Under the pieces are notes generated by a model, which saw only the letters and a list, made by a program, of their open reading frames with translations, was not told the DNA's origin and made no database searches. Of a stretch of DNA of 64,000 bases, positions 1-60,558 are shown in pieces. The DNA lies in the sequence record NC_070963.1, one strand, 5' to 3'. Position numbers and translations under genes: made by a program. Each line of letters begins with the position of its first letter. Within the stretch, counting starts at the first letter, position 1.

Positions 1-1
1 T

Positions 2-280
2 CTTTATTCATTAATTGAAAAGGGGCAAGAAGCAATTAATGGGATAATGGAACTTGCTGGAGAAGGTGGAAGTCCAAGAGCATATGAAGTTGCTGGACAA
101 CTTATCAAAAGTGTTGGAGATGTAACAGATAAACTTATAGATTTACAGAAAAAACTTAAAGAAGTTGAAGATGAATCTGTTAAAACAACTAATAATGTCA
201 CAAATAATGCAGTTTTTGTTGGATCAACTTCAGAACTTTCAAAATTACTCAAGCAAGGTTTTCTAAATAATAAAGAGTAA
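2..280 (+). CDS. gp16: Terminase small subunit (T4 gp16-like), 5'-truncated by window edge
   Basis: Open frame from base 2 (LYSLIEKGQEAINGIMELAGEGGSPRAYEVAGQLIK...NNAVFVGSTSEL); PRAYEV and FVGST motifs typical of T4-like gp16; upstream of gp17. Confidence 0.85.
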   Translation, partial: LYSLIEKGQEAINGIMELAGEGGSPRAYEVAGQLIKSVGDVTDKLIDLQKKLKEVEDESVKTTNNVTNNAVFVGSTSELSKLLKQGFLNNKE

Positions 281-293: not shown

Positions 294-2123
294 ATGGGTT
301 GGTCAGAAAAATATAAAAAATCTATTGACTGTAACAATCCAAAAGGATTTTCTCAAAGAGCTCATTGTCAAGGACGAAACAAAAAATTGAAAGAACAATT
401 TAAACCATTTAAAACAGTTGAGGAAATTGCTAAGAAGCATCGTATGGATGTTTCATTTATTCAAAAGCAATTGGACATGGGCGAACCAATCGAACATGAG
501 CATACTAAAAATCATGAACTAGCAAAAGAAATTGCTCTTCAACATTTAGATGAAATTCCAGATTACTATACTCGTTTGAAAAAAATGGAGGCATCTGCAA
601 AAAAAGAACATAAAAAGTTCAAAGATGTAAAAATTAATGAAGAAGGTCTTCGTGCTTGGTTTGGAAAGTCTAAGTCTAAAGAAGGAAAACCTGGTTGGGT
701 AAATGTTGTTACAGGTGGAACTTGTGCTAGTGATGAACCTGGAGAAGGAACTCCAAAATGCGTATCTTCAGCAAAAAGAGCAAGCATGACTAAAGCAGAA
801 AGATTATCTGCAGCAAGAAGAAAAAAAGCAGCAGATCCTGGTCAACAAGAAAAGTCAGGTGCTGCAAAACCAACTTATGTTACAACAGATCCAAAGAAAA
901 AAATGAAAGAAGAACTGGATTTACAAGAAGTCACAGATAAACCTGGAAAAGGTAGTGGTAAAAAAGACGCTTGCTATCATAAAGTAAAATCAAGATATGA
1001 TGTTTGGCCAAGTGCATATGCTTCTGGAGCACTTGTTAAGTGTCGTAAAGTAGGTGCTGCAAATTGGGGAACTAAGTCTGAAGCAATGGAAATGGTTAGA
1101 TATTGTCCAAAGTGCCAAAAAGATGAAACTAGAAATGAATGCAAATATGGCGTAAAATATTGGGATATGTTCTCTAGACCTTCTGCTTTGACCACAAATC
1201 AATTGAAATATAATATTGCGACTGTCCATCCAGGAAACTTTCCAGAATCATATGATCATGAGTATTCGATGGCACGTTCTGAACTTTCAACCATTATTGC
1301 TGCAGCAAAAAGACTTCGTAAAAAAATGAAAGGTGAAGGTAATATTGAAGCATGGGTGCAATCAAAAATTACCAAAGCAGCAGATTATATTGATGCAGCT
1401 GCTGATTATATCGATAGTGGTGAAATGTCTGAACAGGTTGCAAATACTGATACAATGTCAGATAAAAAACCATTTGACATTGCAGTTAAAAAAATTATGG
1501 ATAGAAAAGGTAAACTGACTCCTTCTCAAAGAATTATTGCTCTTAAACAAGCAGGAAAACTTCAAGGTGTCGATGAAAGTGCTGCTGCATTACTTCGTGC
1601 TGGTCTTGCTGCAGGAACTGCTCTTGCTGGTATGAGTGTTGTTAAACAAGCAAAAGAAGTTGGCAAAAAAATAGAAGCAAGAAATCAACAAACTCAAAAA
1701 GCAATTGATAGTCTTAGAAACTCTTATGACTTAGAGGGTGAAGTAATTGATGAAAAGTGTTGGGATGGATATAAGAAAAAAGGAATGAAGACAATGTTTG
1801 GAAAGAGATATCCAAATTGCGTAAAAGCAGAAGGATTCTCTAACTGGAGAGAAGAAATGGGTTTAAGTGAGGATTGGCAATCAGTAAATCGTAAAGATAA
1901 AACTGATGGATTAAGTCAAAAAGCAGTTAATGCCTATCGTCGTGAGAATCCAGGTTCAAAACTTCAAACTGCAGTAACTGAAAAAAAACCAACTGGTAAA
2001 AGAGCAAAGCGTCGTGCTTCATTCTGTCGTAGATCTGCTGGACAAAGAGATATGCATAATATAGATTGTTCTAAAACGCCAGATAAACCAATTTGTAAGG
2101 CAAGAAAGAGGTGGAATTGTTAA
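294..2123 (+). CDS. Modular hypothetical protein (609 aa) made of small Cys/basic modules, including a DUF5661-like segment
   Basis: ORF track; distinct modules such as IEHEHT...IALQHLDEIPDYYTRL, DACYHKVKSRYDVWPSAYASGALVKCRK, KCWDGYKKKG...YPNCVK. Confidence 0.7.
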   Translation: MGWSEKYKKSIDCNNPKGFSQRAHCQGRNKKLKEQFKPFKTVEEIAKKHRMDVSFIQKQLDMGEPIEHEHTKNHELAKEIALQHLDEIPDYYTRLKKMEASAKKEHKKFKDVKINEEGLRAWFGKSKSKEGKPGWVNVVTGGTCASDEPGEGTPKCVSSAKRASMTKAERLSAARRKKAADPGQQEKSGAAKPTYVTTDPKKKMKEELDLQEVTDKPGKGSGKKDACYHKVKSRYDVWPSAYASGALVKCRKVGAANWGTKSEAMEMVRYCPKCQKDETRNECKYGVKYWDMFSRPSALTTNQLKYNIATVHPGNFPESYDHEYSMARSELSTIIAAAKRLRKKMKGEGNIEAWVQSKITKAADYIDAAADYIDSGEMSEQVANTDTMSDKKPFDIAVKKIMDRKGKLTPSQRIIALKQAGKLQGVDESAAALLRAGLAAGTALAGMSVVKQAKEVGKKIEARNQQTQKAIDSLRNSYDLEGEVIDEKCWDGYKKKGMKTMFGKRYPNCVKAEGFSNWREEMGLSEDWQSVNRKDKTDGLSQKAVNAYRRENPGSKLQTAVTEKKPTGKRAKRRASFCRRSAGQRDMHNIDCSKTPDKPICKARKRWNC

Positions 2124-2171: not shown

Positions 2172-2582
2172 ATGAATACTAAAATTTGTACAAAATGTAA
2201 AGAAGAAAAACCAAGAGATAATATAAGTTTTCCCCCACATAATAAGTGTAAAGATGGTTTAGATAGTTGGTGTAGAAAATGTAGAGCAAATTATAGATCA
2301 GAAATATGTAGAGGAAAATTTAGAGGGCAACTTACAGATGATGAAGTTAGGAAATTAAAAAAACAAGAAAAATGTGATATATGTGGAGGTAATGAAATTG
2401 CAGGATCTAGAAATAATATACATGTCGGAAAACTATACGCACTAGTAATGGATCATAATCATAATAGTGGAAAGTTTCGTGGAATGTTATGCCACCATTG
2501 CAATAGAGGTTTGGGAAATTTTAAGGATAATATAAATACTTTACATGCAGCAATAGAGTATTTAAGAGAAAGAGATAAGTAA
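2172..2582 (+). CDS. Endonuclease VII-family (His-Me) putative homing endonuclease
   Basis: CxxC motifs, DHNHNSGKFRGMLCHHCNRGLGNFKDN core. Confidence 0.85.
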   Translation: MNTKICTKCKEEKPRDNISFPPHNKCKDGLDSWCRKCRANYRSEICRGKFRGQLTDDEVRKLKKQEKCDICGGNEIAGSRNNIHVGKLYALVMDHNHNSGKFRGMLCHHCNRGLGNFKDNINTLHAAIEYLRERDK

Positions 2583-2890
2583 TGAAATCTTTCAAACAGT
2601 TTATTTCAGAGAGTGTAAATATAGCAGGAGATTTCAATGGAAATCTTTATATGAACAGTTCTCAACCAGAACAAGCAACCGAATCTTTTCTTGCTGATAT
2701 AGTTTGGCAGGGTAAGTTATATCGTATGGAAGTGGAAGGTAAAATGCTCGATAAAAATGCGTTAACAGAACAACTTCAAGATGAGTATCCTGGAGCAATT
2801 GTTCATAACATTTATCCAGCAACATCAAATCCTTTAAAGATTAAAAACGCACAGAGATATAGACCTGAAAGTTTAACTTGGAGTGATTAA
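2582..2890 (+). CDS. Hypothetical protein with CTS-like N-terminus (MKSFKQFISE)
   Basis: ORF track; start overlaps upstream stop codon. Confidence 0.7.
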   Translation: MKSFKQFISESVNIAGDFNGNLYMNSSQPEQATESFLADIVWQGKLYRMEVEGKMLDKNALTEQLQDEYPGAIVHNIYPATSNPLKIKNAQRYRPESLTWSD

Positions 2891-2893
2891 TTA

Positions 2894-4213
2894 ATGGCAC
2901 AGTGGAATAAGAATGAACAAGATTATTTAAATCAGGAAAGAACACTTTTTGAAGTTAATGGTGTTGCGACAAGAGATGGACATATTGTAGACGAATATAA
3001 TCCATTTCCAGTAACTATAAACACAGATGCTTTTGGAAGAACAAGAGTATCAAACCCACTTACACTTTTTGATTCATCTCACAGATATAGGGATAATAAT
3101 CTATGGGAATCCTTAGTTGTGGGAACTGGTTCTACGGTTGGATTTGTAACAGCACAGGGTTTAGTTTCTCTTGGAATTGGAACCACTGCCGGTTGTTCTA
3201 TCACAAGAGAAACCACAAAGGTATTTTCATATCAACCAGGAAAATCTTTATTAATTTTGAATACTTTTGTGATGAATGCACCAAAAGAAAATCTTCGCCA
3301 AAGAGCAGGATATTTTGGTGCTGATAATGGAATTTATTTTGAAGTTGCAGGAATTGGATCTACTTCTGTAAGTTTTGTAGAAAGAAGTTTGTCAACTGGA
3401 ACAGAAACAAAAGTTCCACAATCTCAATGGAACGGAGATAAATTAGATGGAACAGGGCATTCTGGATTAACTTTAGATACATCCAAAGCACAAATTTTGT
3501 GGACAGATGTTGAATGGTTAGGATTAGGAACTGTACGAGTTGGATTTGTAATCAATGGAAAATTCATCCATTGTCATTCTTTCCATCACGCAAATATAAT
3601 TGAATCTACTTACATGACAACTGCTTCTTTGCCGTTGAGATTGGAAATTTCAAATACTGGAATTACTACAAGTTCAAGTATATTCAAACAAGTTTGTTCA
3701 ACTGTTATTTCAGAAGGTGGATATGAACTTCGTGGATTGCAACAAGCAGTACAAACTCCTATTACTACTCCAGTAGATTTGCCAGTTGCGGGAACATATT
3801 ATCCAATAATCTCTCTTCGTCTTAAAACTTCTCCCAATAGATTAGATGCAATCGCTATTTTGACTGCATTATCAATAATGGGTTCTGGAAATGGTCCAAA
3901 ATATAACTGGCAAATGAGAGCATCCGCAACTACAAGTGGTGGAACTTGGGTTGATGCTGGTACTGATAGTGCTGTGGAATACAAACTTGATGGTGGAACT
4001 GTAACTGGTGGAAGAATATTAGCATCTGGATTTTTAACATCAGCAAACCAAACGACACCAACAGTTGATATTCTTAAAGAAGCACTATTTAAATTCCAAT
4101 TAGAGAGAAATTCATTTACTGGAACACCTTATGAACTAACACTTGTTTGTGCCAGTGATACTGCTGGTGCTGATGTGTTTGCTTCAATGGACTGGGAAGA
4201 AATTAGTAGATAA
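2894..4213 (+). CDS. Probable virion structural protein (beta-rich, G/S/T-rich, 439 aa)
   Basis: Long ORF in late operon; composition typical of beta-sandwich structural proteins. Confidence 0.55.
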   Translation: MAQWNKNEQDYLNQERTLFEVNGVATRDGHIVDEYNPFPVTINTDAFGRTRVSNPLTLFDSSHRYRDNNLWESLVVGTGSTVGFVTAQGLVSLGIGTTAGCSITRETTKVFSYQPGKSLLILNTFVMNAPKENLRQRAGYFGADNGIYFEVAGIGSTSVSFVERSLSTGTETKVPQSQWNGDKLDGTGHSGLTLDTSKAQILWTDVEWLGLGTVRVGFVINGKFIHCHSFHHANIIESTYMTTASLPLRLEISNTGITTSSSIFKQVCSTVISEGGYELRGLQQAVQTPITTPVDLPVAGTYYPIISLRLKTSPNRLDAIAILTALSIMGSGNGPKYNWQMRASATTSGGTWVDAGTDSAVEYKLDGGTVTGGRILASGFLTSANQTTPTVDILKEALFKFQLERNSFTGTPYELTLVCASDTAGADVFASMDWEEISR

Positions 4214-4215: not shown

Positions 4216-5937
4216 ATGACAATTCAAGATATTCAACTCAATCAAAAAGACGCTTATCTTTCTAATCCAAATCTAAAGAGAGCAAATACAACAATTCAAT
4301 GGACTGAAGATCAGATTGTCGAGTTTTTGAAGTGTAAGGAAGACCCTGTATACTTTGCTAGAAATTATATCAAAATTGTTTCTCTGGATCACGGATTGGT
4401 GCCATTTAAGATGTATCCGTTTCAGGAAAAACTTGTAACTAATTTTCATAAGAATCGATTCAATATTTGTAAGATGCCCCGCCAGACGGGTAAATCTACT
4501 ACTTGCGTATCTTATCTTTTACATTATGCACTTTTCAATGATAATGTAAATATTGCTATTCTTGCTAACAAAGCATCTACCGCAAGAGATCTTCTCCAAA
4601 GATTACAACTTGCTTATGAGAATCTTCCTAAATGGATGCAGCAAGGTGTTCTTCAATGGAACAGGGGAAGTTTAGAATTAGAGAATGGATCCAAAATTAT
4701 GGCAGCATCCACATCAGCATCTGCTGTTCGTGGTGGATCTTATAATATTATTTTCTTGGACGAATTTGCGTTTATTCCAAATCATATTGCTGATGACTTT
4801 TTTGCTTCAGTATATCCTACTATCTCTTCCGGACAAAGCACAAAAGTTATCATAGTTTCAACGCCACGAGGTATGAATCACTTCTACCGTATGTGGCACG
4901 ACGCAGAGCGTGGTAAAAATGAATATGTGCCTACTGATGTTCATTGGTCTGAAGTTCCCGGTAGAGACGAAAACTGGAAGGCACAGACAATTGCTAATAC
5001 ATCGGAGCAACAGTTTAAAGTTGAGTTTGAATGTGAGTTTTTAGGATCTGTCAATACCTTGATTAATCCAGCAAAACTTCGAAATCTTGTTTATGAAGAT
5101 CCAATTAAAAGAAATGCTGGACTTGACATTTACGAAAACCCTAAAGAAGAACACAACTACTTAATAACAGTTGACGTTGCTCGTGGTATTGGAAATGATT
5201 ATTCAGCATTTATTGTTTTCGATATCACCAACTTTCCATATAAAGTTGTTGCAAAATATAGAAATAATGAAATCAAACCAATGTTATTTCCCAGCATTAT
5301 TCACGAAGTAGCAAAAGGATATAATGATGCTTGGTTATTGGTTGAAGTTAATGATATTGGAGATCAAGTTGCGAATATTTTACATTTCGATCTCGAATAT
5401 GATAATGTTTTAATGTGTGCTATGAGAGGAAGAGCAGGGCAGATTGTAGGATCGGGATTTAGTGGTAAAAAGTCTCAACTGGGAGTTAGAATGACTGCTG
5501 CCGTTAAAAAGTTGGGATGTTCCAATTTAAAGACACTGCTAGAAGATGATAAATTATTAACTGTTGACTATGACATTATATCAGAATTAACAACATTTGC
5601 ACAGCGTCATAATTCATTTGAGGCGGAAGAAGGATGTAATGACGACTTAGCAATGTGTCTAGTTATTTTCTCTTGGTTAGTTGCTCAAGATTATTTTAAA
5701 GAAATGACGGACAATGATGTTCGTAAAAGAATCTATGAAGAACAAAAAAACCAAATTGAACAAGATATGTCACCATTTGGTTTTATTTCTGATGGATTAG
5801 ATGATTTTAATGTTACTATTGATGAAGAAACTGGAGATCGATGGATATCTGCCGGATTAAAAAATGAAAATAATGCGTTAGAAGTATGGAATGTAGATGA
5901 GTATGGTGATAGATCTTACATGTGGGAATATCGTTAG
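4216..5937 (+). CDS. gp17: Terminase large subunit
   Basis: Walker A PRQTGKST, Walker B IIFLDEFAF, RNase H-like VDVARG and DDLAM nuclease motifs. Confidence 0.97.
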   Translation: MTIQDIQLNQKDAYLSNPNLKRANTTIQWTEDQIVEFLKCKEDPVYFARNYIKIVSLDHGLVPFKMYPFQEKLVTNFHKNRFNICKMPRQTGKSTTCVSYLLHYALFNDNVNIAILANKASTARDLLQRLQLAYENLPKWMQQGVLQWNRGSLELENGSKIMAASTSASAVRGGSYNIIFLDEFAFIPNHIADDFFASVYPTISSGQSTKVIIVSTPRGMNHFYRMWHDAERGKNEYVPTDVHWSEVPGRDENWKAQTIANTSEQQFKVEFECEFLGSVNTLINPAKLRNLVYEDPIKRNAGLDIYENPKEEHNYLITVDVARGIGNDYSAFIVFDITNFPYKVVAKYRNNEIKPMLFPSIIHEVAKGYNDAWLLVEVNDIGDQVANILHFDLEYDNVLMCAMRGRAGQIVGSGFSGKKSQLGVRMTAAVKKLGCSNLKTLLEDDKLLTVDYDIISELTTFAQRHNSFEAEEGCNDDLAMCLVIFSWLVAQDYFKEMTDNDVRKRIYEEQKNQIEQDMSPFGFISDGLDDFNVTIDEETGDRWISAGLKNENNALEVWNVDEYGDRSYMWEYR

Positions 5938-5999: not shown

Positions 6000-8177
6000 A
6001 TGCCGCTTAATTTAGCATCTCCTGGAATTGTAGTAAGAGAGGTTGATTTAACACTTGGAAGAGTTGCACCATCATCTGACAAAATTGGTGCAATTGTTGC
6101 ACCTTTTTCGAAAGGGCCTGTAGATTCACCAACTTTAGTTGAAAATGAGAACGATTTATTAGTAAATTTTGGAGAACCATACTCAACAGACAAACATTAT
6201 GAGCATTGGTTATCAGCTTCTTCATACTTAGCATATGGTGGAGCACTTAGAGTTGTAAGAGCAAATGATAATGATTTAAGAAATGGATTTGTAGGAACTG
6301 CATCAAGTGTAAAAATTGACAGTTTAGATCATTATAATGCTTTAGGATATGATGAAAATACTCTTTCTGGAGTAGTTGTTGCTGCAAGAAATCCAGGATC
6401 TTGGTCTAATGGACTTAAGGTTGCTATTATTGACTCAAAAGCAGATCAAATTTTAGTAGGTGTTAACACATCGGTAGCATCGGGAATTACAAATATTGCA
6501 GTCGGATATGGTGTCACCCAATCAATAGCAGGTAGAATTAATCCTGGTGCAGGAACAACTTCAGTTCTTGATGGATACTTAAAAGGAATTATTACAGAAA
6601 TTTCTGGAAGTAGTGTATATGTTAAAGTTCTTTCTTATGTGTCTGCAGCAGGAACTGAAACTCAAGTAGATTATCAACCTTCAGGTGTTTATGCTTTCTC
6701 TTCAAGTGGAAGCGTAGCAATCCATACAAGTGGACAAACAGTTTCCACAGGATCAACTTCATATACTGGAAGACTTGATTGGTTTGATCAGCAAACTTTA
6801 GGTATTACCAGCACTTCAACTATTTCTTGGAACAATATTGCACCAAGACCAGGAACTTCTGCATATGCTGCAGCAAGAGACTCAAGATTTGATGAAGTGC
6901 ATGTAGTTGTAATTGATGCTCTTGGAACAGTAACTGGAAATGCTGGTACAATTCTTGAGAAGCATTTAAGTCTGTCTAAAGCAACTGATGCTGAGTTTTC
7001 TGTAGGAAATCCAGCATACTGGAGAAAGTACATTGTAAATAATTCAGAGTATATCTTTGGACTTGGTGCTCCAACAGGAATTGTTACTACAGGATATAGT
7101 AGTGGGTTTAGTTTAGAATCTGATGTCGCTTGGGATCAAACAGCAGAAGGTATTACTTTTGCTGCTGCAGGAGCATCTACAAACACTTTGGTAGGTGGTA
7201 AAGATTACAGTGGAGCACAAGATCTTAATTCTGCAGGTTCTTTAACAGCAACTCTCGGTGAGTTATCTGATGGATATGATTTATTTGAAAACACTGAAAA
7301 CTTTAATGTAGATTTCCTTTTAATGGGATCTGCTGCTTATGATATTTCAACTGCTCAGGCACTTGCAAATAAACTCATTTCTGTAGCAGAATTAAGAAAA
7401 GATGCAATCGCCTTTATTTCCCCATACAGAGGTGCTGCTTTATCAGACACTTCAGTACAAACTGCAGTAACAGTAAGATCTGCTGCTGACATTACTGATA
7501 ATGTAGTTCAATTTTATGCTTCGGTTTCATCATCTTCTTATGCAATATTTGATAGTGGATACAAATACATGTATGATAGATTTTCAAATACATTTAGATA
7601 TGTTCCATTAAATGGTGATATTGCAGGTTTATGTGCTCGTAATGATATTAATAACTTCCCTTGGTACTCACCAGCAGGGACATCAAGAGGTGCGATTCTG
7701 AATGCAGTTAAACTTGCATACAATCCAACAAAAACTCAAAGAGATACACTTTATTCAAATAGAGTTAATCCAGTAATTTTCTCACCTGGTGCGGGAATTA
7801 TTCTGTTTGGTGATAAAACGGGACTTGCTAAAGCATCAGCATTTGACAGAATTAACGTTCGTCGCCTGTTTGTTTATCTTGAGAATGCGATTTCTCAAGC
7901 GGCAAAAGATGCTCTCTTTGAGTTTAATGATGAAATTACCAGAACAAACTTTGTAAATACAATTGAACCATTCTTACGTGATGTTCAAGCAAAGAGAGGT
8001 ATCTTTGATTATGTTGTTATTTGTGATGAAACAAATAACACTGCTGCGGTAATCGACAACAATGAATTTGTTGCCGACATCTATATCAAACCAGCAAGAT
8101 CAATTAACTTCATTGGTCTTAACTTTATTGCCACCAAAACTGGTGTTGACTTTGAAGAAGTAATCGGAAACTTTTAA
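6000..8177 (+). CDS. gp18: Tail sheath protein
   Basis: LASPGIVVREVDLT N-terminus; WYSPAGTSRG, FDRINVRRLF, FEFNDEITR sheath motifs. Confidence 0.96.
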   Translation: MPLNLASPGIVVREVDLTLGRVAPSSDKIGAIVAPFSKGPVDSPTLVENENDLLVNFGEPYSTDKHYEHWLSASSYLAYGGALRVVRANDNDLRNGFVGTASSVKIDSLDHYNALGYDENTLSGVVVAARNPGSWSNGLKVAIIDSKADQILVGVNTSVASGITNIAVGYGVTQSIAGRINPGAGTTSVLDGYLKGIITEISGSSVYVKVLSYVSAAGTETQVDYQPSGVYAFSSSGSVAIHTSGQTVSTGSTSYTGRLDWFDQQTLGITSTSTISWNNIAPRPGTSAYAAARDSRFDEVHVVVIDALGTVTGNAGTILEKHLSLSKATDAEFSVGNPAYWRKYIVNNSEYIFGLGAPTGIVTTGYSSGFSLESDVAWDQTAEGITFAAAGASTNTLVGGKDYSGAQDLNSAGSLTATLGELSDGYDLFENTENFNVDFLLMGSAAYDISTAQALANKLISVAELRKDAIAFISPYRGAALSDTSVQTAVTVRSAADITDNVVQFYASVSSSSYAIFDSGYKYMYDRFSNTFRYVPLNGDIAGLCARNDINNFPWYSPAGTSRGAILNAVKLAYNPTKTQRDTLYSNRVNPVIFSPGAGIILFGDKTGLAKASAFDRINVRRLFVYLENAISQAAKDALFEFNDEITRTNFVNTIEPFLRDVQAKRGIFDYVVICDETNNTAAVIDNNEFVADIYIKPARSINFIGLNFIATKTGVDFEEVIGNF

Positions 8178-11232: not shown

Positions 11233-11883
11233 ATGAAACTCATCACAGAAGAAGTCCAACAAGTAAAGTTTATCACCGAAGGAAAAGGTGCCGATAAAAA
11301 AATGTATATTGAAGGAATTTTCCTTCAAGGTGATATTTGCAATCGTAATGGAAGAATGTATCCAATGGAAACTCTTTCACGTGAGGTGAAGAGATATACT
11401 GAGGCATTTGTCAATAAAGGACGTGCTCTTGGAGAACTCGGACATCCAGATGGACCAACAGTAAATCTTGATCGTGTTTCTCATAAAATTGTTTCCCTCA
11501 CTGCAGAGGGGACTAATTTTAAAGGTAAAGCACAACTGCTTGAAACTCCGATGGGTAAAATTGCAAAATCTTTAATTAGTGAGGGAGTTTGTCTTGGTGT
11601 TTCTTCTCGTGGTGTTGGATCACTCAAAATGACCAATGAAGGTCATAAAGTTGTTGGTGAAGATTTTATGCTTGCAACTGCTGCTGATATTGTTGCGGAT
11701 CCTTCTGCCCCAGATGCATTTGTTCAGGGGATTATGGAAGGAAAAGAATGGGTTTGGGATGGTGGAATTCTTCGTGAAAAATTTGCCGAACAAACTCAAA
11801 GAAGAATCAATACTCTCGTTGATCAAAAAATATTGGAAGAACATAAATTGAATCTTTTCAATGAATTTCTTTCAAATCTTTAA
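11233..11883 (+). CDS. gp21: Prohead maturation protease
   Basis: NRNGRMYP, ALGELGHPDGPTVNLDRVSH, GVSSRGVGS, DIVADPSAPDAFV. Confidence 0.96.
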   Translation: MKLITEEVQQVKFITEGKGADKKMYIEGIFLQGDICNRNGRMYPMETLSREVKRYTEAFVNKGRALGELGHPDGPTVNLDRVSHKIVSLTAEGTNFKGKAQLLETPMGKIAKSLISEGVCLGVSSRGVGSLKMTNEGHKVVGEDFMLATAADIVADPSAPDAFVQGIMEGKEWVWDGGILREKFAEQTQRRINTLVDQKILEEHKLNLFNEFLSNL

Positions 11884-11918: not shown

Positions 11919-13079
11919 ATGTCCGTTGGTAGAAATTTACAAGAAATGGAAAACGTAGTAACCAAAGGGGCTGCACCTGCCGATCCAATGAGCACCATTG
12001 CCCAGAATGCTTCTGGAGTTATGATTCCAGGACAAACTGGTAGTTGGGAAGATTTAGGCGGTCCTACCCCAGAAAATTATCGCCCAGACGATGATTCTGC
12101 AGCACTTAAAACTCCTGGAGCAACTCTTGCTCAAGTAAAGAACGTAGTTAATGCTAAAGCAGCAGCTGCTGAACCAATGCATACTATGGCAAAGGAGGAA
12201 GTTGAGGAAGATGATGATCTTGTCGATGAAGAAGAACTTGATGAAGATGAAGAAGTAGTTGCTGAAGAATCTTCTAAAAAGAAGAAGAAAGAGGAAAAAG
12301 AAGATGAAGATGAGGACGAAGATGAAGAGGATGAAATGAAGGAAGAGTTTGACATTGAAGAAGATGTCAATGCTCTTCTTGCTGGTGAAGAACTTTCTGA
12401 GGAATTCCAAGAGAAAGCACGCACCATTTTTGAAGCTGCTATTCGTTCAAAAGTTTCTGAAATTAAAGAAGAACTTCAACAGACTTATGAAAATGCTTTA
12501 GTTGAAGAAGTTCAATTTATTAAACAGGAACTTACCGAACGTGTAGATGCATACCTTGAGTATGTTGCTGACGAGTGGATTCAAGAGAATGCACTTGCAG
12601 TTGAGCACGGTCTTAAGACTGAAATGACCGAATCATTCCTTCAAGGAATGAAGAGTCTTTTTGAAGATCATTATGTAACAATCCCTGAAGATAGATATGA
12701 TGTAATCGAGAGTATGGTAGATAAACTTGATGAAATGGAAGGAAAACTCAACGAGCAAATTGAAAGAAATGTTGCTCTCAATAGAAGATTAGCAGAGTCA
12801 GTTGCTGATGTAATTTTTGCAGATGTCGCTGAGGGTCTTGCACTTTCTCAGAAGGACAAACTCGCTTCTCTTGCCGAAAATGTTGAGTTTGATGGTGAAG
12901 CAAACTATCGTGAGAAACTGGTAACTCTGAGGGAATCATACTTCCCAACAAATACTGGTACTCAAAGGGGTATCTCTGAGAACTTATCAGAAGAAGTTTC
13001 ATATGAAGGAACTGAAAATTCAGTTTCACCAATTATGGAAGCATATCTTCAGACTCTCAGTAGAGTCGCTAACAAGTGA
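11919..13079 (+). CDS. gp22: Prohead core scaffolding protein
   Basis: Very acidic, coiled-coil; FQEKARTIFEAA, YLEYVADEW, LRESYF; located between gp21 and gp23. Confidence 0.93.
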   Translation: MSVGRNLQEMENVVTKGAAPADPMSTIAQNASGVMIPGQTGSWEDLGGPTPENYRPDDDSAALKTPGATLAQVKNVVNAKAAAAEPMHTMAKEEVEEDDDLVDEEELDEDEEVVAEESSKKKKKEEKEDEDEDEDEEDEMKEEFDIEEDVNALLAGEELSEEFQEKARTIFEAAIRSKVSEIKEELQQTYENALVEEVQFIKQELTERVDAYLEYVADEWIQENALAVEHGLKTEMTESFLQGMKSLFEDHYVTIPEDRYDVIESMVDKLDEMEGKLNEQIERNVALNRRLAESVADVIFADVAEGLALSQKDKLASLAENVEFDGEANYREKLVTLRESYFPTNTGTQRGISENLSEEVSYEGTENSVSPIMEAYLQTLSRVANK

Positions 13080-41427: not shown

Positions 41428-42750
41428 ATGAAAAATTTTCACCAATTCATAACGGAAGCAACTTCAGCGTCAGTTCAGGCAAAACGTCTTGGACTTGTTG
41501 GCGATGGACACGGAGGGTGGTATAATAGGGCTACCGGTGAATTTGAGGCAAAAACCGTGGGTGGTCAACTTAAGTATTTCAATAAGCGACAGGTCATTGG
41601 TGGAAAAGATCCTAAACAGAGTGAATTTGAAAAAAATATTCCTCTTGGATCTTCAATTCCAAATCAACCTGCACCTCAACAAGAAGTTCCTGTAGAGCAA
41701 CAACCTCCAGAAGAAATTCCTCAAGAAGCACCTGTTGCAACTCCACCACCAGTTCCTAAAACTAATGGAACTCTTACGATTGCTTTTGGGCGTTTTAATC
41801 CCCCAACAGTCGGACATCAGCAGTTAATGGATACTGCTGCCATGGCAGCAATGGAAGATGGTGGTGATTATATTATTGTTCCTTCCCGTAGTCAGGATAA
41901 AAAGAAAAATCCATTAGATCCTGACACAAAAATTTCATATATGAGAAAGATGTTCCCGGATCATAGTGAAAGAATTGTAAATGATAAAAACTTTAAAACC
42001 ATTTTTGATGTTCTTAAAAAAGCACATAATGATGGATATGCTAATGTAAGAATTGTCGGCGGTTCTGATAGAGTTAAAGAATTTGAAAGATTGTCTAATG
42101 ATTATAATGGACAACTTTATCAATTTGATATGATTAACGTTGTGTCATCTGGTGATAGGGATCCTGATAGTAATAAAGGTGTAGAAGGAGTTTCCGCGTC
42201 AAGACTTAGACTTGCAGCAGCTGAAGGTGATTTTATAACGTTTAGATCTGGTCTTCCTGTTGGTATTAAAACCAAAGAAGCACTTCAACTTTTTGATCTT
42301 GTCAGACAAGGAATGGGTATTCAGGAAATACAACAAGAGGGTTATAATACTTGGGAAATTGCACCAAAATTTGATTCACAATCTCTAAGAGAAAATTACA
42401 TCGATAAAAATATTTTTAAAGTTGGAACTTTTGTCGAAAATTTGAATACTGGATTAAATGGTGAAATTATTCGTAGAGGAACTAATTATTTAATTTGTGT
42501 AACTGAAAATGGAATGATGTTTAAATCTTGGATTAAAGATGTGAAAGAATCATACTCTGAAAAGCACATGGATAGAATGATGAGACTTCCTGGAAAACCA
42601 AATACTCTAATAGGAACATTGGGTGCATTTAAATATGCTGCAATGATGACTCCGGGTGCAATCGGAACTGGTATGGAAAATATTCAAAGTGGTGGAAAAC
42701 CTTATGGTGTTAATTTGATAAATAAAAATAGGAAAAAAGTAAAAGGTTAA
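41428..42750 (+). CDS. HIGH-motif nucleotidyltransferase (cytidylyltransferase-like) with CTS-like N-terminus
   Basis: AFGRFNPPTVGH, KNPL, VGGSDRV, SSGDRDPD, GVSASRLR; starts MKNFHQFITE. Confidence 0.8.
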   Translation: MKNFHQFITEATSASVQAKRLGLVGDGHGGWYNRATGEFEAKTVGGQLKYFNKRQVIGGKDPKQSEFEKNIPLGSSIPNQPAPQQEVPVEQQPPEEIPQEAPVATPPPVPKTNGTLTIAFGRFNPPTVGHQQLMDTAAMAAMEDGGDYIIVPSRSQDKKKNPLDPDTKISYMRKMFPDHSERIVNDKNFKTIFDVLKKAHNDGYANVRIVGGSDRVKEFERLSNDYNGQLYQFDMINVVSSGDRDPDSNKGVEGVSASRLRLAAAEGDFITFRSGLPVGIKTKEALQLFDLVRQGMGIQEIQQEGYNTWEIAPKFDSQSLRENYIDKNIFKVGTFVENLNTGLNGEIIRRGTNYLICVTENGMMFKSWIKDVKESYSEKHMDRMMRLPGKPNTLIGTLGAFKYAAMMTPGAIGTGMENIQSGGKPYGVNLINKNRKKVKG

Positions 42751-46351: not shown

Positions 46352-47323
46352 ATGGATTTGATTGACTCCAAGTATATTGGACTTGTTTCATCACGTCTAC
46401 AAAAGTTTAAAAGGGTTAAGGCGGATCTCTACAACTTTCGCTGTCCCCTTTGTGGTGATTCTCAAAAGAATAAAAGTAAGACAAGAGGATATTTTTATCA
46501 AGTCAAAAATAATACAAACTTTAAGTGCCATAACTGTGGAGCAAGTTTGTCTTTAAATAATTTCCTTAAAGAATTAGATCCAACTCTTCACAAACAATAT
46601 ACGATGGAGAAGTTTAAGGAAGGACACACTGGAAAAAACTTCGTCGTAGAGCAACCAAAGTTAGAGTTTGTAAAACCAGTATTCAAAACAAAAATTAATT
46701 TGCCAAAAGCATCTGAGAATCAGATTGCCCGCGAATATTTGGAAAAAAGAAAACTTGATCCTGAAAAGTTTTACTTTGCTGACAAGTTCAAAGAATGGGC
46801 AAATACTCAAAAACATACCTTTAATACTATTGGTAAGGATGAATCTAGAATTATCATACCCCTATACGACATAGAAAAGAATCTGATTGGATTTCAGGGA
46901 AGAGCACTTGGTCCTTCTCCAAATAAATACATCACTGTCATGATTTCTAATGACTCGCCTAAACTTTACGGTCTTGAAAAAGTTGATACAACAAAAACGA
47001 TTTATATCGTTGAAGGTCCCTTTGACTCCACTTTCATTGAAAACGCTGTTGCTATGTGTGGGTCCGATGTTGATATTAGGTCGTTTGGTTGGAGCGATTA
47101 TATTTGGGTTTTTGATAATGAACCACGCAATCGAGAAATCGTCAAAAGAATATCAAAGACCATCGACAGAGGTGACCAAGTAGTGATCTGGCCCACAACT
47201 GTTCAGCATAAGGACATAAACGATATGGTTCTTGCTGGACATGACGTTATGAATGTGTTAAAATCAAATACATACGCAGGTTTAGAAGCACAAATTAAGT
47301 TTAACAACTGGAAAAAAGTATGA
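46352..47323 (+). CDS. gp61: DNA primase
   Basis: CPLCGDS...CHNC zinc finger, GFQGR, IVEGPFDS TOPRIM, FDNEPRN, KDINDM. Confidence 0.95.
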   Translation: MDLIDSKYIGLVSSRLQKFKRVKADLYNFRCPLCGDSQKNKSKTRGYFYQVKNNTNFKCHNCGASLSLNNFLKELDPTLHKQYTMEKFKEGHTGKNFVVEQPKLEFVKPVFKTKINLPKASENQIAREYLEKRKLDPEKFYFADKFKEWANTQKHTFNTIGKDESRIIIPLYDIEKNLIGFQGRALGPSPNKYITVMISNDSPKLYGLEKVDTTKTIYIVEGPFDSTFIENAVAMCGSDVDIRSFGWSDYIWVFDNEPRNREIVKRISKTIDRGDQVVIWPTTVQHKDINDMVLAGHDVMNVLKSNTYAGLEAQIKFNNWKKV

Positions 47324-49620
47324 GTAACGGAACAAAAGTAGTCAAGAGAAGCGGTGATATTGAATCTCTTGATTTAAATAAATTACATGTAATGGTCGAA
47401 GAATCTTGTAAGGATCTTGCTGGCGTTTCTGCCTCTCAAGTTGAAATGCAATCTGGAATTCAATTCTACAATGGAATTACCACTGCAGAAATTCAAGAAA
47501 TTCTAATTCGTTCTGCTTCTGACCTAATTGATCTTGAGCACCCTAATTACCAATTTGTTGCTGCTCGTCTTCTATTGTTTTCAATTCGTAAACAAATTTT
47601 TGGAAGAATTTACAATAGTTTGACTGTGTTGGAACATACACGTAAGTGTGTTGAAATGGGAGTTTATGATCCTGAAATTTTAAATCTATATTCTGAAGAA
47701 GAATTTGAAAAGTTAGAGTCTTTTATTGATCATGATCGAGATTATCTTTTTACTTATGCAGGTCTTCGTCAAGTCGTAGATAAGTATCTCGTTCAAGATC
47801 GTAGCACTAACGAACTTTATGAAACGCCACAATACATGTATCTTTTGATTGCGGCGACTATATTTTCAAAGTATCCAAAAGAAACACGTTTAGATTACGT
47901 TAAGAAGTATTATGACGCAATCTCAAAGCATAAAATCAACATTCCTACACCAATCATGGCAGGTGTTAGAACCCCACTTCGCCAATATGCAAGTTGTGTT
48001 CTTGTTGATGTTGATGACACCCTTGACAGCATCTTCAGTTCTGATATGGCAATTGGTCGCTATGTATCTCAGAGAGCAGGAATTGGTATCAACGCAGGTC
48101 GAATCCGTGGCATCAACTCTAAAATCAGAGGTGGGGAAGTTCAGCATACAGGCGTTGTCCCATTCCTCAAAAAGTTTGAAGCAACTGTTAGATGTTGTAC
48201 ACAAAATGGGATTCGTGGTGGAAGTGCTACTGTACATTTCCCAATCTGGCACCAAGAAATCGAAGATATTCTAGTTCTCAAAAATAATAAAGGAACCGAA
48301 GATAATCGTGTCCGTAAGTTAGATTATTCTATTCAAATCAGCAAACTCTTCTATGAGCGATTCATCCGTAACGAAGAAATCTCCCTCTTCTCTCCCCACG
48401 CTGTTCCTGGTCTGTATGATGCTTTTGGCACTGATGGATTTGACGACTTATATCTTCGTTATGAACGAGATGAGTCTATTCCAAGAAAAACTATCGGCGC
48501 TCAAGAACTCTTTCTTTCACTCTTAAAGGAACGTGCTGAAACTGGTCGTATTTACATTATGAATATTGACCATTGTAATTCTCATTCATCTTTCCTTGAT
48601 AAAGTTGAAATGAGTAATCTTTGTCAAGAAATTACTCTTCCGACTAAACCTATTCAACATATTGATGATCCTGATGGTGAAATTGCTCTTTGTATTTTGA
48701 GCGCAATTAACGTTGGAAAACTTAAATCTAATGATGAACTTGAAGTTCTTTGTGATCTTTCTGTTCGTTCTCTTGATGAGTTGATTGACTTTCAAGGATA
48801 CCCCGTCAAATCGGCAGAAATCGCCACCAGAGCACGTCGTTCTCTTGGGGTAGGGTATATTGGTCTTGCTCACTATCTTGCCAAACATGGGGAGCATTAT
48901 GACGATCCTGGCGCTTGGAAATTAGTTCATGATCTAACAGAAGCATTTCAGTATTATTTGATTAAAGCAACTGTTAATCTTGCTAAGGAAAAAGGTGCTT
49001 GTGAATATTCACATCGAACTAAGTATGCTCAAGGTATTCTTCCTATAGATACTTACAAGAAAGACGTGGATGAAATTGTACCTAACGAACTTAAGTATGA
49101 TTGGGAGTCGCTACGGGAGCAGGTTAAGAAGTATGGAGTACGGAACTCAACATTGTCCGCACAGATGCCATCGGAGAGCAGTTCCGTTGTGTCAAACGCA
49201 ACCAATGGAATCGAACCACCTAGAGGATACTTGTCCGTTAAGAAGTCGAAGAAAGGACCTCTTAAGCAAATTGTTCCACAGTACCAAACTCTTAAGAACA
49301 ATTATACGCTTCTTTGGGATATGCCTAGCAATCTTGGTTATATCAATATTGTTGCTGTTATGCAAAAATTCTTTGATCAGGCGATTTCTGGAAACTGGTC
49401 ATATAACCCACAGAATTATTCAGATAATGAAGTTCCTGTTAGCGTAATGGCACAAGACCTTCTAATGACCTATAAGTTGGGTTGGAAGACCAGTTATTAT
49501 CAAAATACCTATGACATTAAAACTGATGAAGTAGTTGAAGAACCAAAGCAAGAACTCCAGTCTCTTCTAGATGATATTATGAGTAGTGATGAAGATGATT
49601 GTGAAAGTTGCAAAATTTGA
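47320..49620 (+). CDS. nrdA: Ribonucleotide reductase class Ia alpha subunit
   Basis: ATP-cone, ASCVL, SNLCQEI, LCILSA, MPSESSS, C-terminal CESC; no intein. Confidence 0.97.
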   Translation: MSNGTKVVKRSGDIESLDLNKLHVMVEESCKDLAGVSASQVEMQSGIQFYNGITTAEIQEILIRSASDLIDLEHPNYQFVAARLLLFSIRKQIFGRIYNSLTVLEHTRKCVEMGVYDPEILNLYSEEEFEKLESFIDHDRDYLFTYAGLRQVVDKYLVQDRSTNELYETPQYMYLLIAATIFSKYPKETRLDYVKKYYDAISKHKINIPTPIMAGVRTPLRQYASCVLVDVDDTLDSIFSSDMAIGRYVSQRAGIGINAGRIRGINSKIRGGEVQHTGVVPFLKKFEATVRCCTQNGIRGGSATVHFPIWHQEIEDILVLKNNKGTEDNRVRKLDYSIQISKLFYERFIRNEEISLFSPHAVPGLYDAFGTDGFDDLYLRYERDESIPRKTIGAQELFLSLLKERAETGRIYIMNIDHCNSHSSFLDKVEMSNLCQEITLPTKPIQHIDDPDGEIALCILSAINVGKLKSNDELEVLCDLSVRSLDELIDFQGYPVKSAEIATRARRSLGVGYIGLAHYLAKHGEHYDDPGAWKLVHDLTEAFQYYLIKATVNLAKEKGACEYSHRTKYAQGILPIDTYKKDVDEIVPNELKYDWESLREQVKKYGVRNSTLSAQMPSESSSVVSNATNGIEPPRGYLSVKKSKKGPLKQIVPQYQTLKNNYTLLWDMPSNLGYINIVAVMQKFFDQAISGNWSYNPQNYSDNEVPVSVMAQDLLMTYKLGWKTSYYQNTYDIKTDEVVEEPKQELQSLLDDIMSSDEDDCESCKI

Positions 49621-59831: not shown

Positions 59832-60007
59832 CGGAACAACAAGAACATCTTAAAAATCTTCTAGAGCAAAGAAATAATCTAGAGCAACAAATGAATCAAA
59901 ATAGAGAACTTTTTTGGAAAGTTCAAGGTGCTATTGAATACTTGACTCAAATCGGAGTCAGTCTTCCACAACCAGAAGCAGTAACTGAAGTTACAGAAGA
60001 GGCTTGA
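59828..60007 (+). CDS. Small coiled-coil protein (59 aa, GTG start)
   Basis: Manual translation; GTGA overlap with upstream stop. Confidence 0.55.
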   Translation: MTEQQEHLKNLLEQRNNLEQQMNQNRELFWKVQGAIEYLTQIGVSLPQPEAVTEVTEEA

Positions 60008-60032
60008 CGGGTTGCGTGAAAGGTTCTATAAT
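60004..60032 (+). promoter_or_regulatory. Sigma70-type promoter for tRNA cluster (TTGACG-N17-TATAAT)
   Basis: Near-consensus, 17-nt spacer. Confidence 0.8.
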
Positions 60033-60118
60033 AGTCTCATAGGCAGCGGAGGTCCAAACTTCGTTTAAGTCCTGCCCCTCCTATGCCTCTCAACGATGCA
60101 CAAACCAGGAGGTCTCTT

Positions 60119-60192
60119 GTCTTGGTAGCTCAGATGGATAGAGCCACTCACTTCTAATGAGTTGGTCGGGGGTTCGAGTCCCTCCCAAGACG
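60119..60192 (+). tRNA. tRNA-Arg(TCT)
   Basis: GTCTTGG/CCAAGAC; ACTCA-CTTCTAA-TGAGT. Confidence 0.93.
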
Positions 60193-60277
60193 CTTGGAGT
60201 ATATGCTCCATATATAAAGAGATAGAGGGTAAGTCACTGTTATATCCTTATGAGATATATTACACTTACTCCATCAT

Positions 60278-60350
60278 TGGGGTGTAGCTCAGCGGTAGTA
60301 GCGGGATGCTGTTAACATCTAGGTCGCAGGTTCGATCCCTGCCGCCCCAG
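60278..60350 (+). tRNA. tRNA-Asn(GTT)
   Basis: TGGGGTG/CGCCCCA; GGATG-CTGTTAA-CATCT. Confidence 0.9.
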
Positions 60351-60556: not shown

Positions 60557-60558
60557 TT

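What the first reader, a model, noticed from the sequence alone, without database searches (positions are those of the whole stretch)
294..2123. Terminase-region ORF looks like a polyprotein of Cys-paired basic mini-domains separated by protease-type sites
Seen: the 609-aa protein is a chain of short, self-contained modules, many with a Cys pair and basic residues (IDCNNPKGFSQRAHC; GGTC...PKC; DACY...VKC; YCPKC...EC; KCW...NCVK; SFC...DC...IC...WNC). Several modules begin right after (I/L/V)-x-E: KINEE|GLR, DLQE|V, GVDE|SAA, VIDE|KCW, GLSE|DWQ. Known: T4 gp21 cleaves head proteins after Glu in (I/L)-x-E. Inference: the protein is packaged in the prohead and cut into a set of small peptides that may be delivered with the DNA.
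Basis: partly seen in the sequence, partly recalled or inferred. Interest (0 to 1): 0.7.

Follow-up and report, generated by a model that had tools for sequence, protein, structure and literature searches.

The report
Shuffled mini-protein polyprotein in cyanophage head locus
This cyanophage gene encodes a string of small, basic, cysteine-paired modules joined by linkers that look like cutting sites for the phage's own head protease, so it is probably packed into the head and cut into separate mini-proteins, though no cutting has been observed.

Summary
The window is Synechococcus phage S-SRM01, a T4-like cyanomyovirus. ORF 294-2123 (609 aa) lies just after the small terminase gene. It belongs to gene cluster T4-GC119, which has more than 12,500 clusters at 50% identity in metagenomes.

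- **Modules:** The protein is built from at least seven modules, which occur in 60 or more different orders among 269 relatives.
- **Separate genes elsewhere:** Non-T4 marine phages encode the same modules as runs of separate small genes.
- **Cysteines:** Five modules each keep a nearly invariant cysteine pair, and a sixth keeps three cysteines.
- **Cutting sites:** The count of (I/L/V)-x-E sites in this one protein is not above chance. Across 150 diverse relatives, however, [ILVM]-x-E is the top junction motif at the N-edge of six unrelated modules (12-52 fold enrichment). It is depleted inside module cores.
- **Internal versus N-terminal copies:** All 19 internal copies of the first module carry Glu exactly where N-terminal copies carry Met.
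Four of the five proposed sites match these family-wide sites.

Relatives are virion proteins in S-SM1 and, by annotation, in S-SCSM1. The phage encodes an S77 (gp21) protease. It also has T4-like capsid-targeting leaders on neighbouring genes and on the virion-borne cytidylyltransferase.

Cleavage, head location in this phage and delivery with the DNA remain inferred. Verdict: a probable gp21-processed head polyprotein, a new variant of a known kind.

The parts
294..2123 (+). Polyprotein ORF (609 aa, 68.5 kDa, pI 9.6); member of cyanophage gene cluster T4-GC119; single copy in the genome
294..386 (+). Module M0 (aa 1-31), Cys13/Cys25. N-terminal copies start M-[GS]-W-S; internal copies in relatives are always preceded by Glu.
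396..632 (+). Module M1 = DUF5661 (aa 35-113), helical, no Cys. The same domain sits inside the DUF2213 head protease/scaffold-like protein of Vibrio phage VPs20.
633..641 (+). Predicted protease site I114-N-E116 | E117 (M1|M2 junction); phi-x-E in 70 of 93 close homologues
642..914 (+). Module M2 (aa 117-207), Cys144/Cys156 (99% conserved); a separate small gene in HTVC027P, C75C1 and CRP-901
921..929 (+). Predicted protease site L210-Q-E212 | V213 (M2|M3 junction); phi-x-E in 98 of 99 close homologues
930..1085 (+). Module M3 (aa 213-264), Cys227/Cys250 (93% conserved); weak DUF5872 likeness; a separate 54-65 aa gene in other phages
1086..1433 (+). Module M4 (aa 265-380). It splits into M4a (C271-x2-C274-x8-C283 hairpin) and M4b (helical, highly conserved, starts near D321-H-E). 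The M3|M4 junction is K-S-E263|A, with no hydrophobic P3.
1434..1745 (+). Variable, indel-rich stretch (aa 381-484), no Cys; contains the candidate site V426-D-E428|S
1746..1754 (+). Predicted protease site I485-D-E487 | K488 directly before K-C-W of M5; phi-x-E in 54 of 79 close homologues
1755..1838 (+). Module M5 (aa 488-515), Cys489/Cys509 (100% conserved); predicted beta-hairpin with the two Cys at its open end
1863..1871 (+). Predicted protease site L524-S-E526 | D527, in the low-confidence linker between M5 and M6; phi-x-E in 96 of 115 close homologues
1872..2120 (+). Module M6 = DUF6321 (aa 527-609), helical, pI 10.5. Cys578 and the C-terminal Cys609 are conserved; Cys592 and Cys601 are specific to this phage. 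C-terminal in 112 of 119 relatives.
11233..11883 (+). gp21-type prohead protease (Peptidase_S77), the presumed processing enzyme
1..280 (+). 3' part of the small terminase gene g16. The polyprotein ORF starts 13 nt after its stop, with no late-promoter-like motif of its own.
2582..2890 (+). Syntenic 102-aa gene (phrog_1742) with a T4-like capsid-targeting leader M-K-S-F-K-Q-F-I-S-E | S
2894..4213 (+). Syntenic 439-aa virion structural protein (phrog_1645)

Best explanation
ORF 294-2123 is most likely a late, head-associated polyprotein.

**What it is.** It is a flexible, lysine-rich chain carrying at least seven small, independently folding modules, most of them stapled by one conserved cysteine pair.

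**Proposed steps.** The chain is incorporated into the prohead. There the phage's gp21-type serine protease (window 11233-11883) cuts after Glu in hydrophobic-x-Glu sites that lie in the linkers. The predicted cuts are after E116, E212, E487 and E526, and possibly after E34, E380 and E428. This would release basic mini-proteins of about 4.6 to 24 kDa, plus one neutral 6 kDa linker piece (aa 429-487), that stay with the packaged DNA.

**Shown here.** The modularity and shuffling are shown. So are the conserved Cys pairs and the strong positional enrichment of the protease-type motif at module edges, with its depletion inside modules. The same modules exist as separate small genes in phages without this arrangement. 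Relatives are associated with virions. The protease and T4-like capsid-targeting leaders are present in the same genome.

**Inferred.** Incorporation into the head of this phage, the cleavage itself and disulfide formation are all inferred. So is whatever the pieces do, whether DNA charge neutralisation, condensation or an action in the host after ejection.
For: 1. **Module shuffling.** There are 60 or more module orders among 269 homologues, and M6 is C-terminal in 112 of 119.
2. **Same modules as separate genes.** HTVC027P gp49-gp52 encode M3, M2, N2 and M6 and lie between the portal and capsid genes. Phages C75C1 and CRP-901 do the same.
3. **Junction motif.** [ILVM]-x-E ranks first of 64 motif classes at the N-edge of each of M0, M2, M3, M4, M5 and M6. 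It is present at one fixed offset in 89, 49, 53, 20, 44 and 41% of copies, against 1.7% per residue background. Further modules also follow phi-x-E by inspection (SNPRIP.., DDMKGM.., N2, N6 and partly DUF192; not quantified).
4. **Inside versus outside cores.** Sites inside module cores number 168 against 227 +/- 13 expected. Outside cores they number 1281 against 796 +/- 24.
5. **Same mature N-terminus.** Internal M0 copies have Glu (19 of 19) where N-terminal copies have Met, so both routes would give G-W-S. N-terminal M2 copies keep short leaders ending in phi-x-E.
6. **Site conservation in close homologues.** LQE212 98/99, LSE526 96/115, INE116 70/93, IDE487 54/79.
7. **Structure.** LSE526 lies in the low-confidence linker between two confidently modelled modules.
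8. **Virion association.** T4-GC119 was detected in S-SM1 virions with 13 peptide counts. S-SCSM1 ORF29 is labelled 'virion protein' by the group that did the virion mass spectrometry.
9. **Protease and its specificity.** A Peptidase_S77 protease is present. T4 gp21 cuts after L/I-x-E (PMC9026906).
10. **The T4 targeting and cleavage system appears conserved here.** Leaders resembling the T4 capsid-targeting sequence (CTS) MKTYQEFIAE are found on the neighbouring 102-aa gene. They are also on 115 of 120 homologues of the virion-borne cytidylyltransferase.
11. **Internal targeting-like stretches.** Stretches fitting K-[ST]-F-x-x-F-phi-x-E occur inside 11 relatives, most of them right before recognisable module starts, against 0.03 expected by chance.
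Against: - No fragment, junction-spanning peptide or non-tryptic N-terminus has been reported for any family member.
- There is no virion proteome for S-SRM01.
- The Syn9 homologue was not detected in virions, and S-PM2 lacks the gene, so it is dispensable.
- This protein has no N-terminal capsid-targeting leader, and none of 269 relatives has one, so the route into the prohead is unknown.
- P1 is not Glu in 38-48% of junction copies for M2, M3, M5 and M6 (62% for M4). In T4, Asp at P1 blocks cleavage.
- The M3|M4 junction always has Lys at P3.
- The raw site count in this single protein is within chance.
- Junction motifs could be inherited together with modules, so the copies counted are not independent events.
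- A fold of gp21 with residues 476-540 gave no answer.
Confidence: 0.52

Rival explanations
1. The protein is an unprocessed virion protein of the beads-on-a-string type. It stays whole and works as a long, flexible, multivalent basic protein, for instance binding or condensing DNA inside the capsid or lining its inner surface. On this view the hydrophobic-x-Glu motif at module edges is a structural or folding feature of the linkers.
For: - The whole chain is largely predicted as disordered between small folded units.
- The modules are basic.
- Relatives are in virions, but there are no data on their size there.
- Many junction copies lack Glu at P1.
- There is no N-terminal targeting leader.
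Against: - Six or more unrelated modules share the same protease-type motif at a fixed offset, and it is depleted inside the modules.
- The Glu/Met equivalence at M0 argues for a defined mature N-terminus.
- Free shuffling of module order, and the same modules being separate genes in other phages, argue that covalent linkage is not needed for function.
Confidence: 0.27
2. The protein sits elsewhere in the virion (neck, tail or baseplate accessory), or is a sticky contaminant of virion preparations. It would then be out of reach of the head protease, and the motif would be coincidental to this lineage.
For: - The gene lies among neck, sheath and terminase genes.
- Proteomes only say 'virion'.
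- Basic proteins co-purify easily.
Against: - DUF5661 occurs inside a head protease/scaffold-like protein of another phage.
- The stand-alone module genes of HTVC027P lie between the portal and capsid genes.
- The syntenic neighbour carries a T4-like capsid-targeting leader.
- Internal CTS-like stretches occur in relatives.
Confidence: 0.12
3. The protein is a non-virion accessory factor for DNA packaging or late gene regulation. It would bind nucleic acid through metal-bound cysteine pairs and act with the adjacent terminase.
For: - The ORF starts 13 nt after g16 and is probably co-transcribed with it.
- It contains a CxxC...C hairpin and many basic residues.
Against: - The gene is not always next to g16/g17 in the same order. 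In P-SSM2 it lies before g16, and it is absent from S-PM2.
- It was detected in virions.
- Most modules have only two Cys, too few for a classical zinc site.
Confidence: 0.06

Closest known systems
T4 internal proteins IPI/IPII/IPIII and Alt (packaged through the capsid-targeting sequence, trimmed by gp21, ejected with the DNA)
   Same: These are basic proteins of a T4-type phage. They have a hydrophobic-x-Glu site for an S77 protease and are non-essential and highly variable between relatives. Genes in the same genome carry T4-like targeting leaders.
   Different: T4 internal proteins are single proteins cut once after a 10-residue N-terminal leader. This protein has no such N-terminal leader and would be cut at several internal junctions into different mini-proteins. 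There is no sequence similarity to T4 internal proteins.
T4 prohead core proteins gp22, gp67 and gp68 (cut by gp21 into several peptides)
   Same: They have multiple L/I-x-E cuts within one polypeptide inside the prohead.
   Different: Those are scaffold components, and their fragments mostly leave the head. Here the pieces are conserved, folded, Cys-paired modules that also exist as genes of their own in other phages.
Polyvalent proteins of phages and conjugative elements (Iyer et al. 2017, PMC5512222)
   Same: Many unrelated domains lie in one polypeptide with variable architectures. They are thought to be packaged and released as separate effectors. Some relatives carry extra domains such as DUF192, DUF3008 and an intein.
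   Different: No hallmark enzymatic or anti-defence domains were found here, only small domains of unknown function. The paper does not mention cyanophages or these domains. Processing here would be by the capsid protease, not by an in-built peptidase.
Multiply cleaved head and ejection proteins of giant phages (phiKZ, 201phi2-1, SPN3US)
   Same: The head protease cuts after Glu at short motifs in many internal head proteins.
   Different: The motif is different (S/A-x-E), the proteins are large, and they are not chains of shuffled mini-modules.
Pfam DUF5661, DUF6321 and DUF5872; PHROGs 727, 3477, 12753, 38880, 4689; cyanophage cluster T4-GC119
   Same: The protein is a member by sequence: DUF5661 1e-13, DUF6321 9e-12 and phrog_727 1e-82. 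T4-GC119 is given in the annotation of orthologues.
   Different: All of these are families of unknown function, and none describes processing or modular shuffling. The DUF5872 match is below threshold.

Membership tests
Substrate of a T4-type (S77, gp21) prohead protease | The phage encodes the protease | tested here: met
   Window 11233-11883 matches Peptidase_S77, E 8e-37
Substrate of a T4-type (S77, gp21) prohead protease | L/I-x-E sites lie in exposed positions | tested here: met
   INE116, LQE212, IDE487 and LSE526 lie at module junctions. They are conserved in close homologues and enriched 12-52 fold at junctions family-wide. LSE526 lies in a low-confidence linker.
Substrate of a T4-type (S77, gp21) prohead protease | The protein is present in the prohead or head | tested here: inconclusive
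   Relatives were detected in whole virions of S-SM1 (13 counts), and S-SCSM1 ORF29 is labelled 'virion protein'. The Syn9 homologue was not detected. There are no data for S-SRM01 and none on location within the virion.
Substrate of a T4-type (S77, gp21) prohead protease | Cleavage products are observed | not testable with these tools
   No peptide-level proteomic data are accessible. The complex prediction gave no answer.
T4 internal-protein class (targeted by the capsid-targeting sequence, CTS) | An N-terminal ~10-residue capsid-targeting leader resembling MKTYQEFIAE and ending in phi-x-E | tested here: not met
   None of 269 family members starts with such a leader. Eleven relatives have internal look-alikes. 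The neighbouring 102-aa gene and two other ORFs in the window do have it.
Polyvalent proteins (Iyer et al. 2017) | Two to fifteen unrelated domains in one polypeptide, with variable architectures | tested here: met
   At least 7 modules and 60 or more architectures
Polyvalent proteins (Iyer et al. 2017) | Hallmark conflict-related enzymatic or anti-defence domains, or an in-built processing peptidase | tested here: not met
   Pfam and NCBIfam find only DUF5661 and DUF6321 here. In relatives they find DUF192, DUF3008 and one intein.
Pfam DUF5661 / DUF6321 | Score above the curated gathering threshold | tested here: met
   51.6 bits against a cut-off of 27, and 45.9 bits against 28.5
Classical zinc-finger or zinc-ribbon proteins | Four metal ligands (Cys/His) per unit | tested here: inconclusive
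   M0, M2, M3, M5 and M6 each have only two conserved Cys. M4a has three Cys plus invariant His312/His322. No metal modelling was done.

The most novel reading that the evidence does not exclude
T4-like cyanophages may use one gene as a combinatorial delivery cassette. Each bead would be a separate, disulfide-stapled, basic mini-protein that the head protease frees inside the capsid and that is ejected with the genome. These could act as protamine-like DNA counter-ions. They could also act as host-takeover or anti-defence peptides. The enormous shuffling and diversity (more than 12,500 clusters at 50% identity) would record an arms race. Internal copies of the T4-type capsid-targeting leader would mean that beads can be targeted and released individually.
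Probability: 0.25. Interest if true: 0.8.

Novelty: new variant of a known kind. Interest (0 to 1): 0.64.

Why it matters
T4-like cyanophages are among the most abundant viruses in the sea, and this family is one of their largest blocks of genes without a known role. If the model holds, three things follow.

- It would give the first functional frame for T4-GC119, DUF5661 and DUF6321.
- It would show that the T4 system of head targeting and gp21 trimming is conserved in cyanophages. That would explain why a cytidylyltransferase keeps turning up in their virions.
- It would describe a new way for a phage to pack a changeable set of small proteins with its DNA.

The idea is directly testable by re-searching existing virion mass-spectrometry data for N-termini that follow the junction Glu residues.

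Tried and rejected
- **Motif count in the single protein:** it is not significant, so the raw count was dropped as an argument.
- **Whole-protein AlphaFold2 model:** mean pLDDT 52.7, unusable for fold search.
- **PDB by sequence:** profiles of the whole protein and of M5+M6 found nothing.
- **Foldseek against PDB with the M5+M6 model:** nothing had E below 1. The alpha-defensin hairpin matches (E 3-8) are generic hairpins and were not used.
- **AlphaFold DB and BFVD:** they returned only homologues without a known function.
- **Complex prediction of gp21 with residues 476-540:** no answer, so it counts neither way.
- **Weak Pfam and NCBIfam hits:** IF2_N, SF3a60_Prp9_C, DUF3781, AFF4_CHD, DA_C and TfpZ are all below threshold and were rejected.
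- **Literature:** searches for DUF5661, DUF6321 and for 'capsid targeting sequence' with cyanophage found nothing relevant. The polyvalent-protein paper does not cover this family.
- **Loose capsid-targeting pattern** ([FYW]..[FLIMW][ILMV].E): not enriched, 13 against 8.9 +/- 3.0. Only the strict T4-like form is enriched.
- **Second copy in the genome:** none found.
Full report
**Where we are.** The window is 100% identical to Synechococcus phage S-SRM01 (MW015081), a freshwater T4-like cyanomyovirus of 240,842 bp. ORF 294-2123 (+) encodes 609 aa and starts 13 nt after the stop of the small terminase gene g16. Downstream lie, in order:
- an endonuclease VII gene (2172-2582);
- a 102-aa gene (2582-2890);
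- a 439-aa virion structural protein (2894-4213);
- the large terminase (4216-5937), sheath, tube and portal genes;
- a Peptidase_S77 prohead protease (11233-11883, E 8e-37);
- a T4-type scaffold and the gp23 capsid protein.

The ORF has no late-promoter-like TATAAATA motif of its own, so it probably rides on the g16 transcript. There is a single copy in the genome.

**Checking the observation.** The 15 cysteines group as 13/25, 144/156, 227/250, 271/274/283, 489/509 and 578/592/601/609. Lys plus Arg make up 20% of residues, and the pI is 9.6. On its own this protein has 9 [ILV]xE sites against 5.7 +/- 2.1 in shuffles, which is not significant. The case therefore rests on comparison with relatives.

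**The family.** Pfam finds DUF5661 (aa 43-99) and DUF6321 (aa 534-607). PHROGs gives several families of unknown function that each cover only part of the protein. Orthologues are annotated as cyanophage gene cluster T4-GC119. Sullivan et al. 2010 (PMC3037559) report three things about this cluster:
- It ranges from 276 to 2985 nt among 16 cyanophages.
- It is absent from S-PM2.
- It was found in purified S-SM1 virions (13 peptide counts) but not in Syn9 virions.

The S-SCSM1 orthologue (ORF29) is labelled 'virion protein' by the group that ran the virion mass spectrometry. The family is very large. A phmmer search of 1.84 billion representatives returns 12,543 clusters at 50% identity with E <= 1e-3, of which 4,170 have E <= 1e-10. 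Sampled relatives sit in the same gp13-gp14-gp15-gp16 context.

**Modules are real and shuffled.** The best-match boundaries of 150 diverse relatives recur at query residues ~35, 113-116, 207-212, 262-269, 377-389, 482-487 and 519-525. I defined seven modules:

| Module | Residues | Notes |
|---|---|---|
| M0 | 1-31 | |
| M1 | 35-113 | DUF5661 |
| M2 | 117-207 | |
| M3 | 213-264 | |
| M4 | 265-380 | separable into M4a and M4b |
| M5 | 486-515 | |
| M6 | 525-609 | DUF6321 |

With these, 269 homologues show at least 60 different module orders. M6 is C-terminal in 112 of 119 relatives and usually ends in ..W-x-Cys. Relatives carry further modules, including DUF192 (10 segments), DUF3008 (4), one intein and several unnamed ones.

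Non-T4 marine phages encode the same modules as consecutive small genes:
- Pelagibacter phage HTVC027P gp49 (M3), gp50 (M2), gp51 and gp52 (M6), which lie between the portal and capsid genes;
- phage C75C1, three such genes;
- Roseobacter phage CRP-901, at least two.

In Vibrio phage VPs20, DUF5661 sits inside the DUF2213 head protease/scaffold-like protein next to the capsid gene.

The Cys pairs are conserved at 100/100% (M0), 99/99% (M2), 93/93% (M3), 100/100% (M5) and 99/96% (M6). M4a keeps three Cys, and M1 has none.

**Junction motif.** In 150 representatives (no more than 50% identical overall) I projected each module's start and asked where [ILV]xE ends relative to it. The background is 1-3% per position. 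At one fixed offset the frequency rises to 79% (internal M0), 36% (M2), 45% (M3), 18% (M4), 41% (M5) and 38% (M6).

Among 64 class-x-residue motifs, [ILVM]-x-E ranks first at every one of the six junctions, enriched 12-52 fold. P3 is hydrophobic inside otherwise Glu/Lys- or Gly/Asn-rich linkers.

All 19 internal M0 copies, which sit behind diverse upstream sequences, have Glu exactly where the 20 N-terminal copies have the initiator Met. The two forms read ..G-G-V-S-E|G-W-S and M-G-W-S. Cleavage in one case and Met removal in the other would therefore give the same mature end. N-terminal M2 copies keep short leaders ending in phi-x-E. Several further modules also follow phi-x-E by inspection, though I did not quantify this.

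Inside module cores the motif is depleted (168 against 227 +/- 13 expected). Outside cores it is enriched (1281 against 796 +/- 24).

In 119 close homologues of the S-SRM01 protein, phi-x-E is kept as follows:
- LQE212 in 98/99;
- LSE526 in 96/115;
- INE116 in 70/93;
- IDE487 in 54/79;
- VDE428 in 34/38;
- LKE34 in 68/97.

VEE44 is not conserved. LDE87 and VTE563 are conserved but lie inside domain cores. The M3|M4 junction always reads K-x-E. S-SM1 and S-SCSM1, the two relatives linked to virions, have sites at the corresponding junctions.

One caveat applies: copies of a module share ancestry, so the percentages are not counts of independent events. The weight lies in the same motif recurring at unrelated modules.

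**The T4 targeting and trimming system in this phage.** T4 gp21 cuts after L/I-x-E, and T4 internal proteins enter the prohead through the leader MKTYQEFIAE (PMC9026906; PMC8442874). Four ORFs in the S-SRM01 genome start with a close look-alike:

| ORF | Size | Leader |
|---|---|---|
| window 2582-2890 (syntenic neighbour) | 102 aa | M-K-S-F-K-Q-F-I-S-E\|S |
| window 41428-42750 (cytidylyltransferase-like) | 440 aa | M-K-N-F-H-Q-F-I-T-E\|A |
| window 52324-53667 | 447 aa | M-K-S-F-S-Q-F-L-E-E\|S |
| record 47292-47495 (outside the window) | 67 aa | M-K-S-F-Q-E-F-L-F-E\|E |

The leader is kept in the 102-aa orthologues of S-CAM9, S-T4 and S-SCSM1. It is also kept in 115 of 120 cytidylyltransferase homologues. 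That enzyme (T4-GC190) is the one repeatedly found in cyanophage virions, and the leader offers a reason for this.

No polyprotein relative has the leader at its N-terminus. However, 11 relatives have a strict internal look-alike (K-[ST]-F-x-x-F-phi-x-E), most of them right before a recognisable module start, against 0.03 expected by chance. I found no paper linking capsid-targeting sequences to cyanophages.

**Structure.** The whole protein models poorly (mean pLDDT 52.7). Only DUF5661, the CxxC hairpin, M5 and part of M6 are confident, which fits small units on a flexible chain. With a 108-sequence module alignment, residues 488-609 model well (mean pLDDT 82.8). M5 is a beta-hairpin (493-511) with its two Cys at the open end. 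M6 is helical (528-606). The least confident stretch is the linker that holds LSE526. No solved or predicted structure of known function matches.

**Best reading.** The gene most likely encodes a head-associated polyprotein that the gp21-type protease cuts at linker sites. The products would be basic, Cys-stapled mini-proteins (predicted 13.8, 10.3, 24.2, 4.6 and 9.6 kDa; pI 9.3-10.5) plus a neutral 6.2 kDa linker piece (aa 429-487, pI 6.2). I put this at about 0.5.

The following are shown:
- the modules, their shuffling and their Cys pairs;
- the motif position and its depletion inside modules;
- the stand-alone gene equivalents in other phages;
- virion association of relatives;
- the presence of the protease and of targeting leaders in the same genome.

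The following are inferred: entry into the prohead (route unknown), cleavage, disulfide formation, and any role after ejection.

The main rival is the same protein left uncut as a multivalent internal protein (about 0.27). A location elsewhere in the virion (0.12) and a packaging-accessory role (0.06) are less likely.

**Compared with what is known.** It works like the T4 internal proteins and the multiply cut prohead core proteins, and it resembles 'polyvalent proteins' in architecture. It fails the defining test for the first class, because it has no N-terminal targeting leader. It fails a hallmark of the last class, because it has no conflict-type enzymatic domains and no in-built peptidase. 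By sequence it is a member of T4-GC119, DUF5661 and DUF6321, all of unknown function. The reading as a protease-processed chain of shuffled mini-proteins is, as far as the searchable literature shows, new. I rate it a new variant of a known kind.

**Dead ends.** These are listed under Tried and rejected. The complex prediction is not evidence either way.

Noticed in passing
window 2582-2890, 41428-42750, 52324-53667 (and record MW015081 47292-47495, outside the window): Four ORFs start with a close look-alike of the T4 capsid-targeting sequence (T4: MKTYQEFIAE; here MK[SN]F..F[IL].E). One is the cytidylyltransferase-like protein (T4-GC190) that several studies found unexpectedly in cyanophage virions. 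Its leader is conserved in 115 of 120 homologues. This suggests T4-style head targeting and gp21 trimming in cyanophages. No paper in the library reports it.
   Followed up: partly
window 4216-5937 and 6000-8177 (record MW015081 128216-132177): Product names in the GenBank record are shifted by one gene. The ORF with Terminase_6N/6C domains is called 'tail sheath protein', and the sheath gene is called 'terminase large subunit'.
   Followed up: yes
window 2172-2582: An endonuclease VII gene with its own TATAAATA motif (2148) sits between the polyprotein and the 102-aa gene. In S-CAM9, S-T4 and S-SCSM1 those two genes are adjacent, so this looks like a homing-endonuclease insertion.
   Followed up: partly
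window, + strand: 2148, 2531, 5955, 10505, 11886, 52294 and others: The T4 late-promoter-like motif TATAAATA occurs 15 times against 4.4 expected, 14 of them on the + strand. Copies lie just upstream of the 102-aa gene, the sheath gene, the scaffold gene and the 447-aa ORF with a targeting leader.
   Followed up: no
relatives P0131, P0133, P0156, P0194 and others; L014 4404-7061: Some family members carry larger extra domains inside the chain: DUF192 in 10 segments, DUF3008 in 4 and one intein. BFVD also lists weaker matches of M5/M6 to large proteins named AAA, SET or cytidylyltransferase in uncultured phages.
   Followed up: partly
window 1755-1838 (module M5): The Cys-stapled hairpin K-C-W..N-C-V matches small bacterial proteins of 38-47 aa in AlphaFold DB at 54-70% identity over 23-24 residues. 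One of them is automatically named 'SSU ribosomal protein S31P'. It also superposes on alpha-defensin hairpins, but that match is not significant.
   Followed up: no
L003 (P-SSM2) 2992-3807: In P-SSM2 the T4-GC119 gene lies between g15 and g16, not after g16, and is only 271 aa. The gene's position and size both vary within the g15-g17 hyperplastic region.
   Followed up: no
window 11919-13079: The scaffold protein has a long, almost purely acidic tract (about aa 93-150, 28 [ILVM]xE sites in all). This could give basic head proteins an electrostatic route into the core. The idea was not tested.
   Followed up: no
window 60001-62000: G+C rises to 0.46 here against about 0.35 elsewhere. Not examined.
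   Followed up: no
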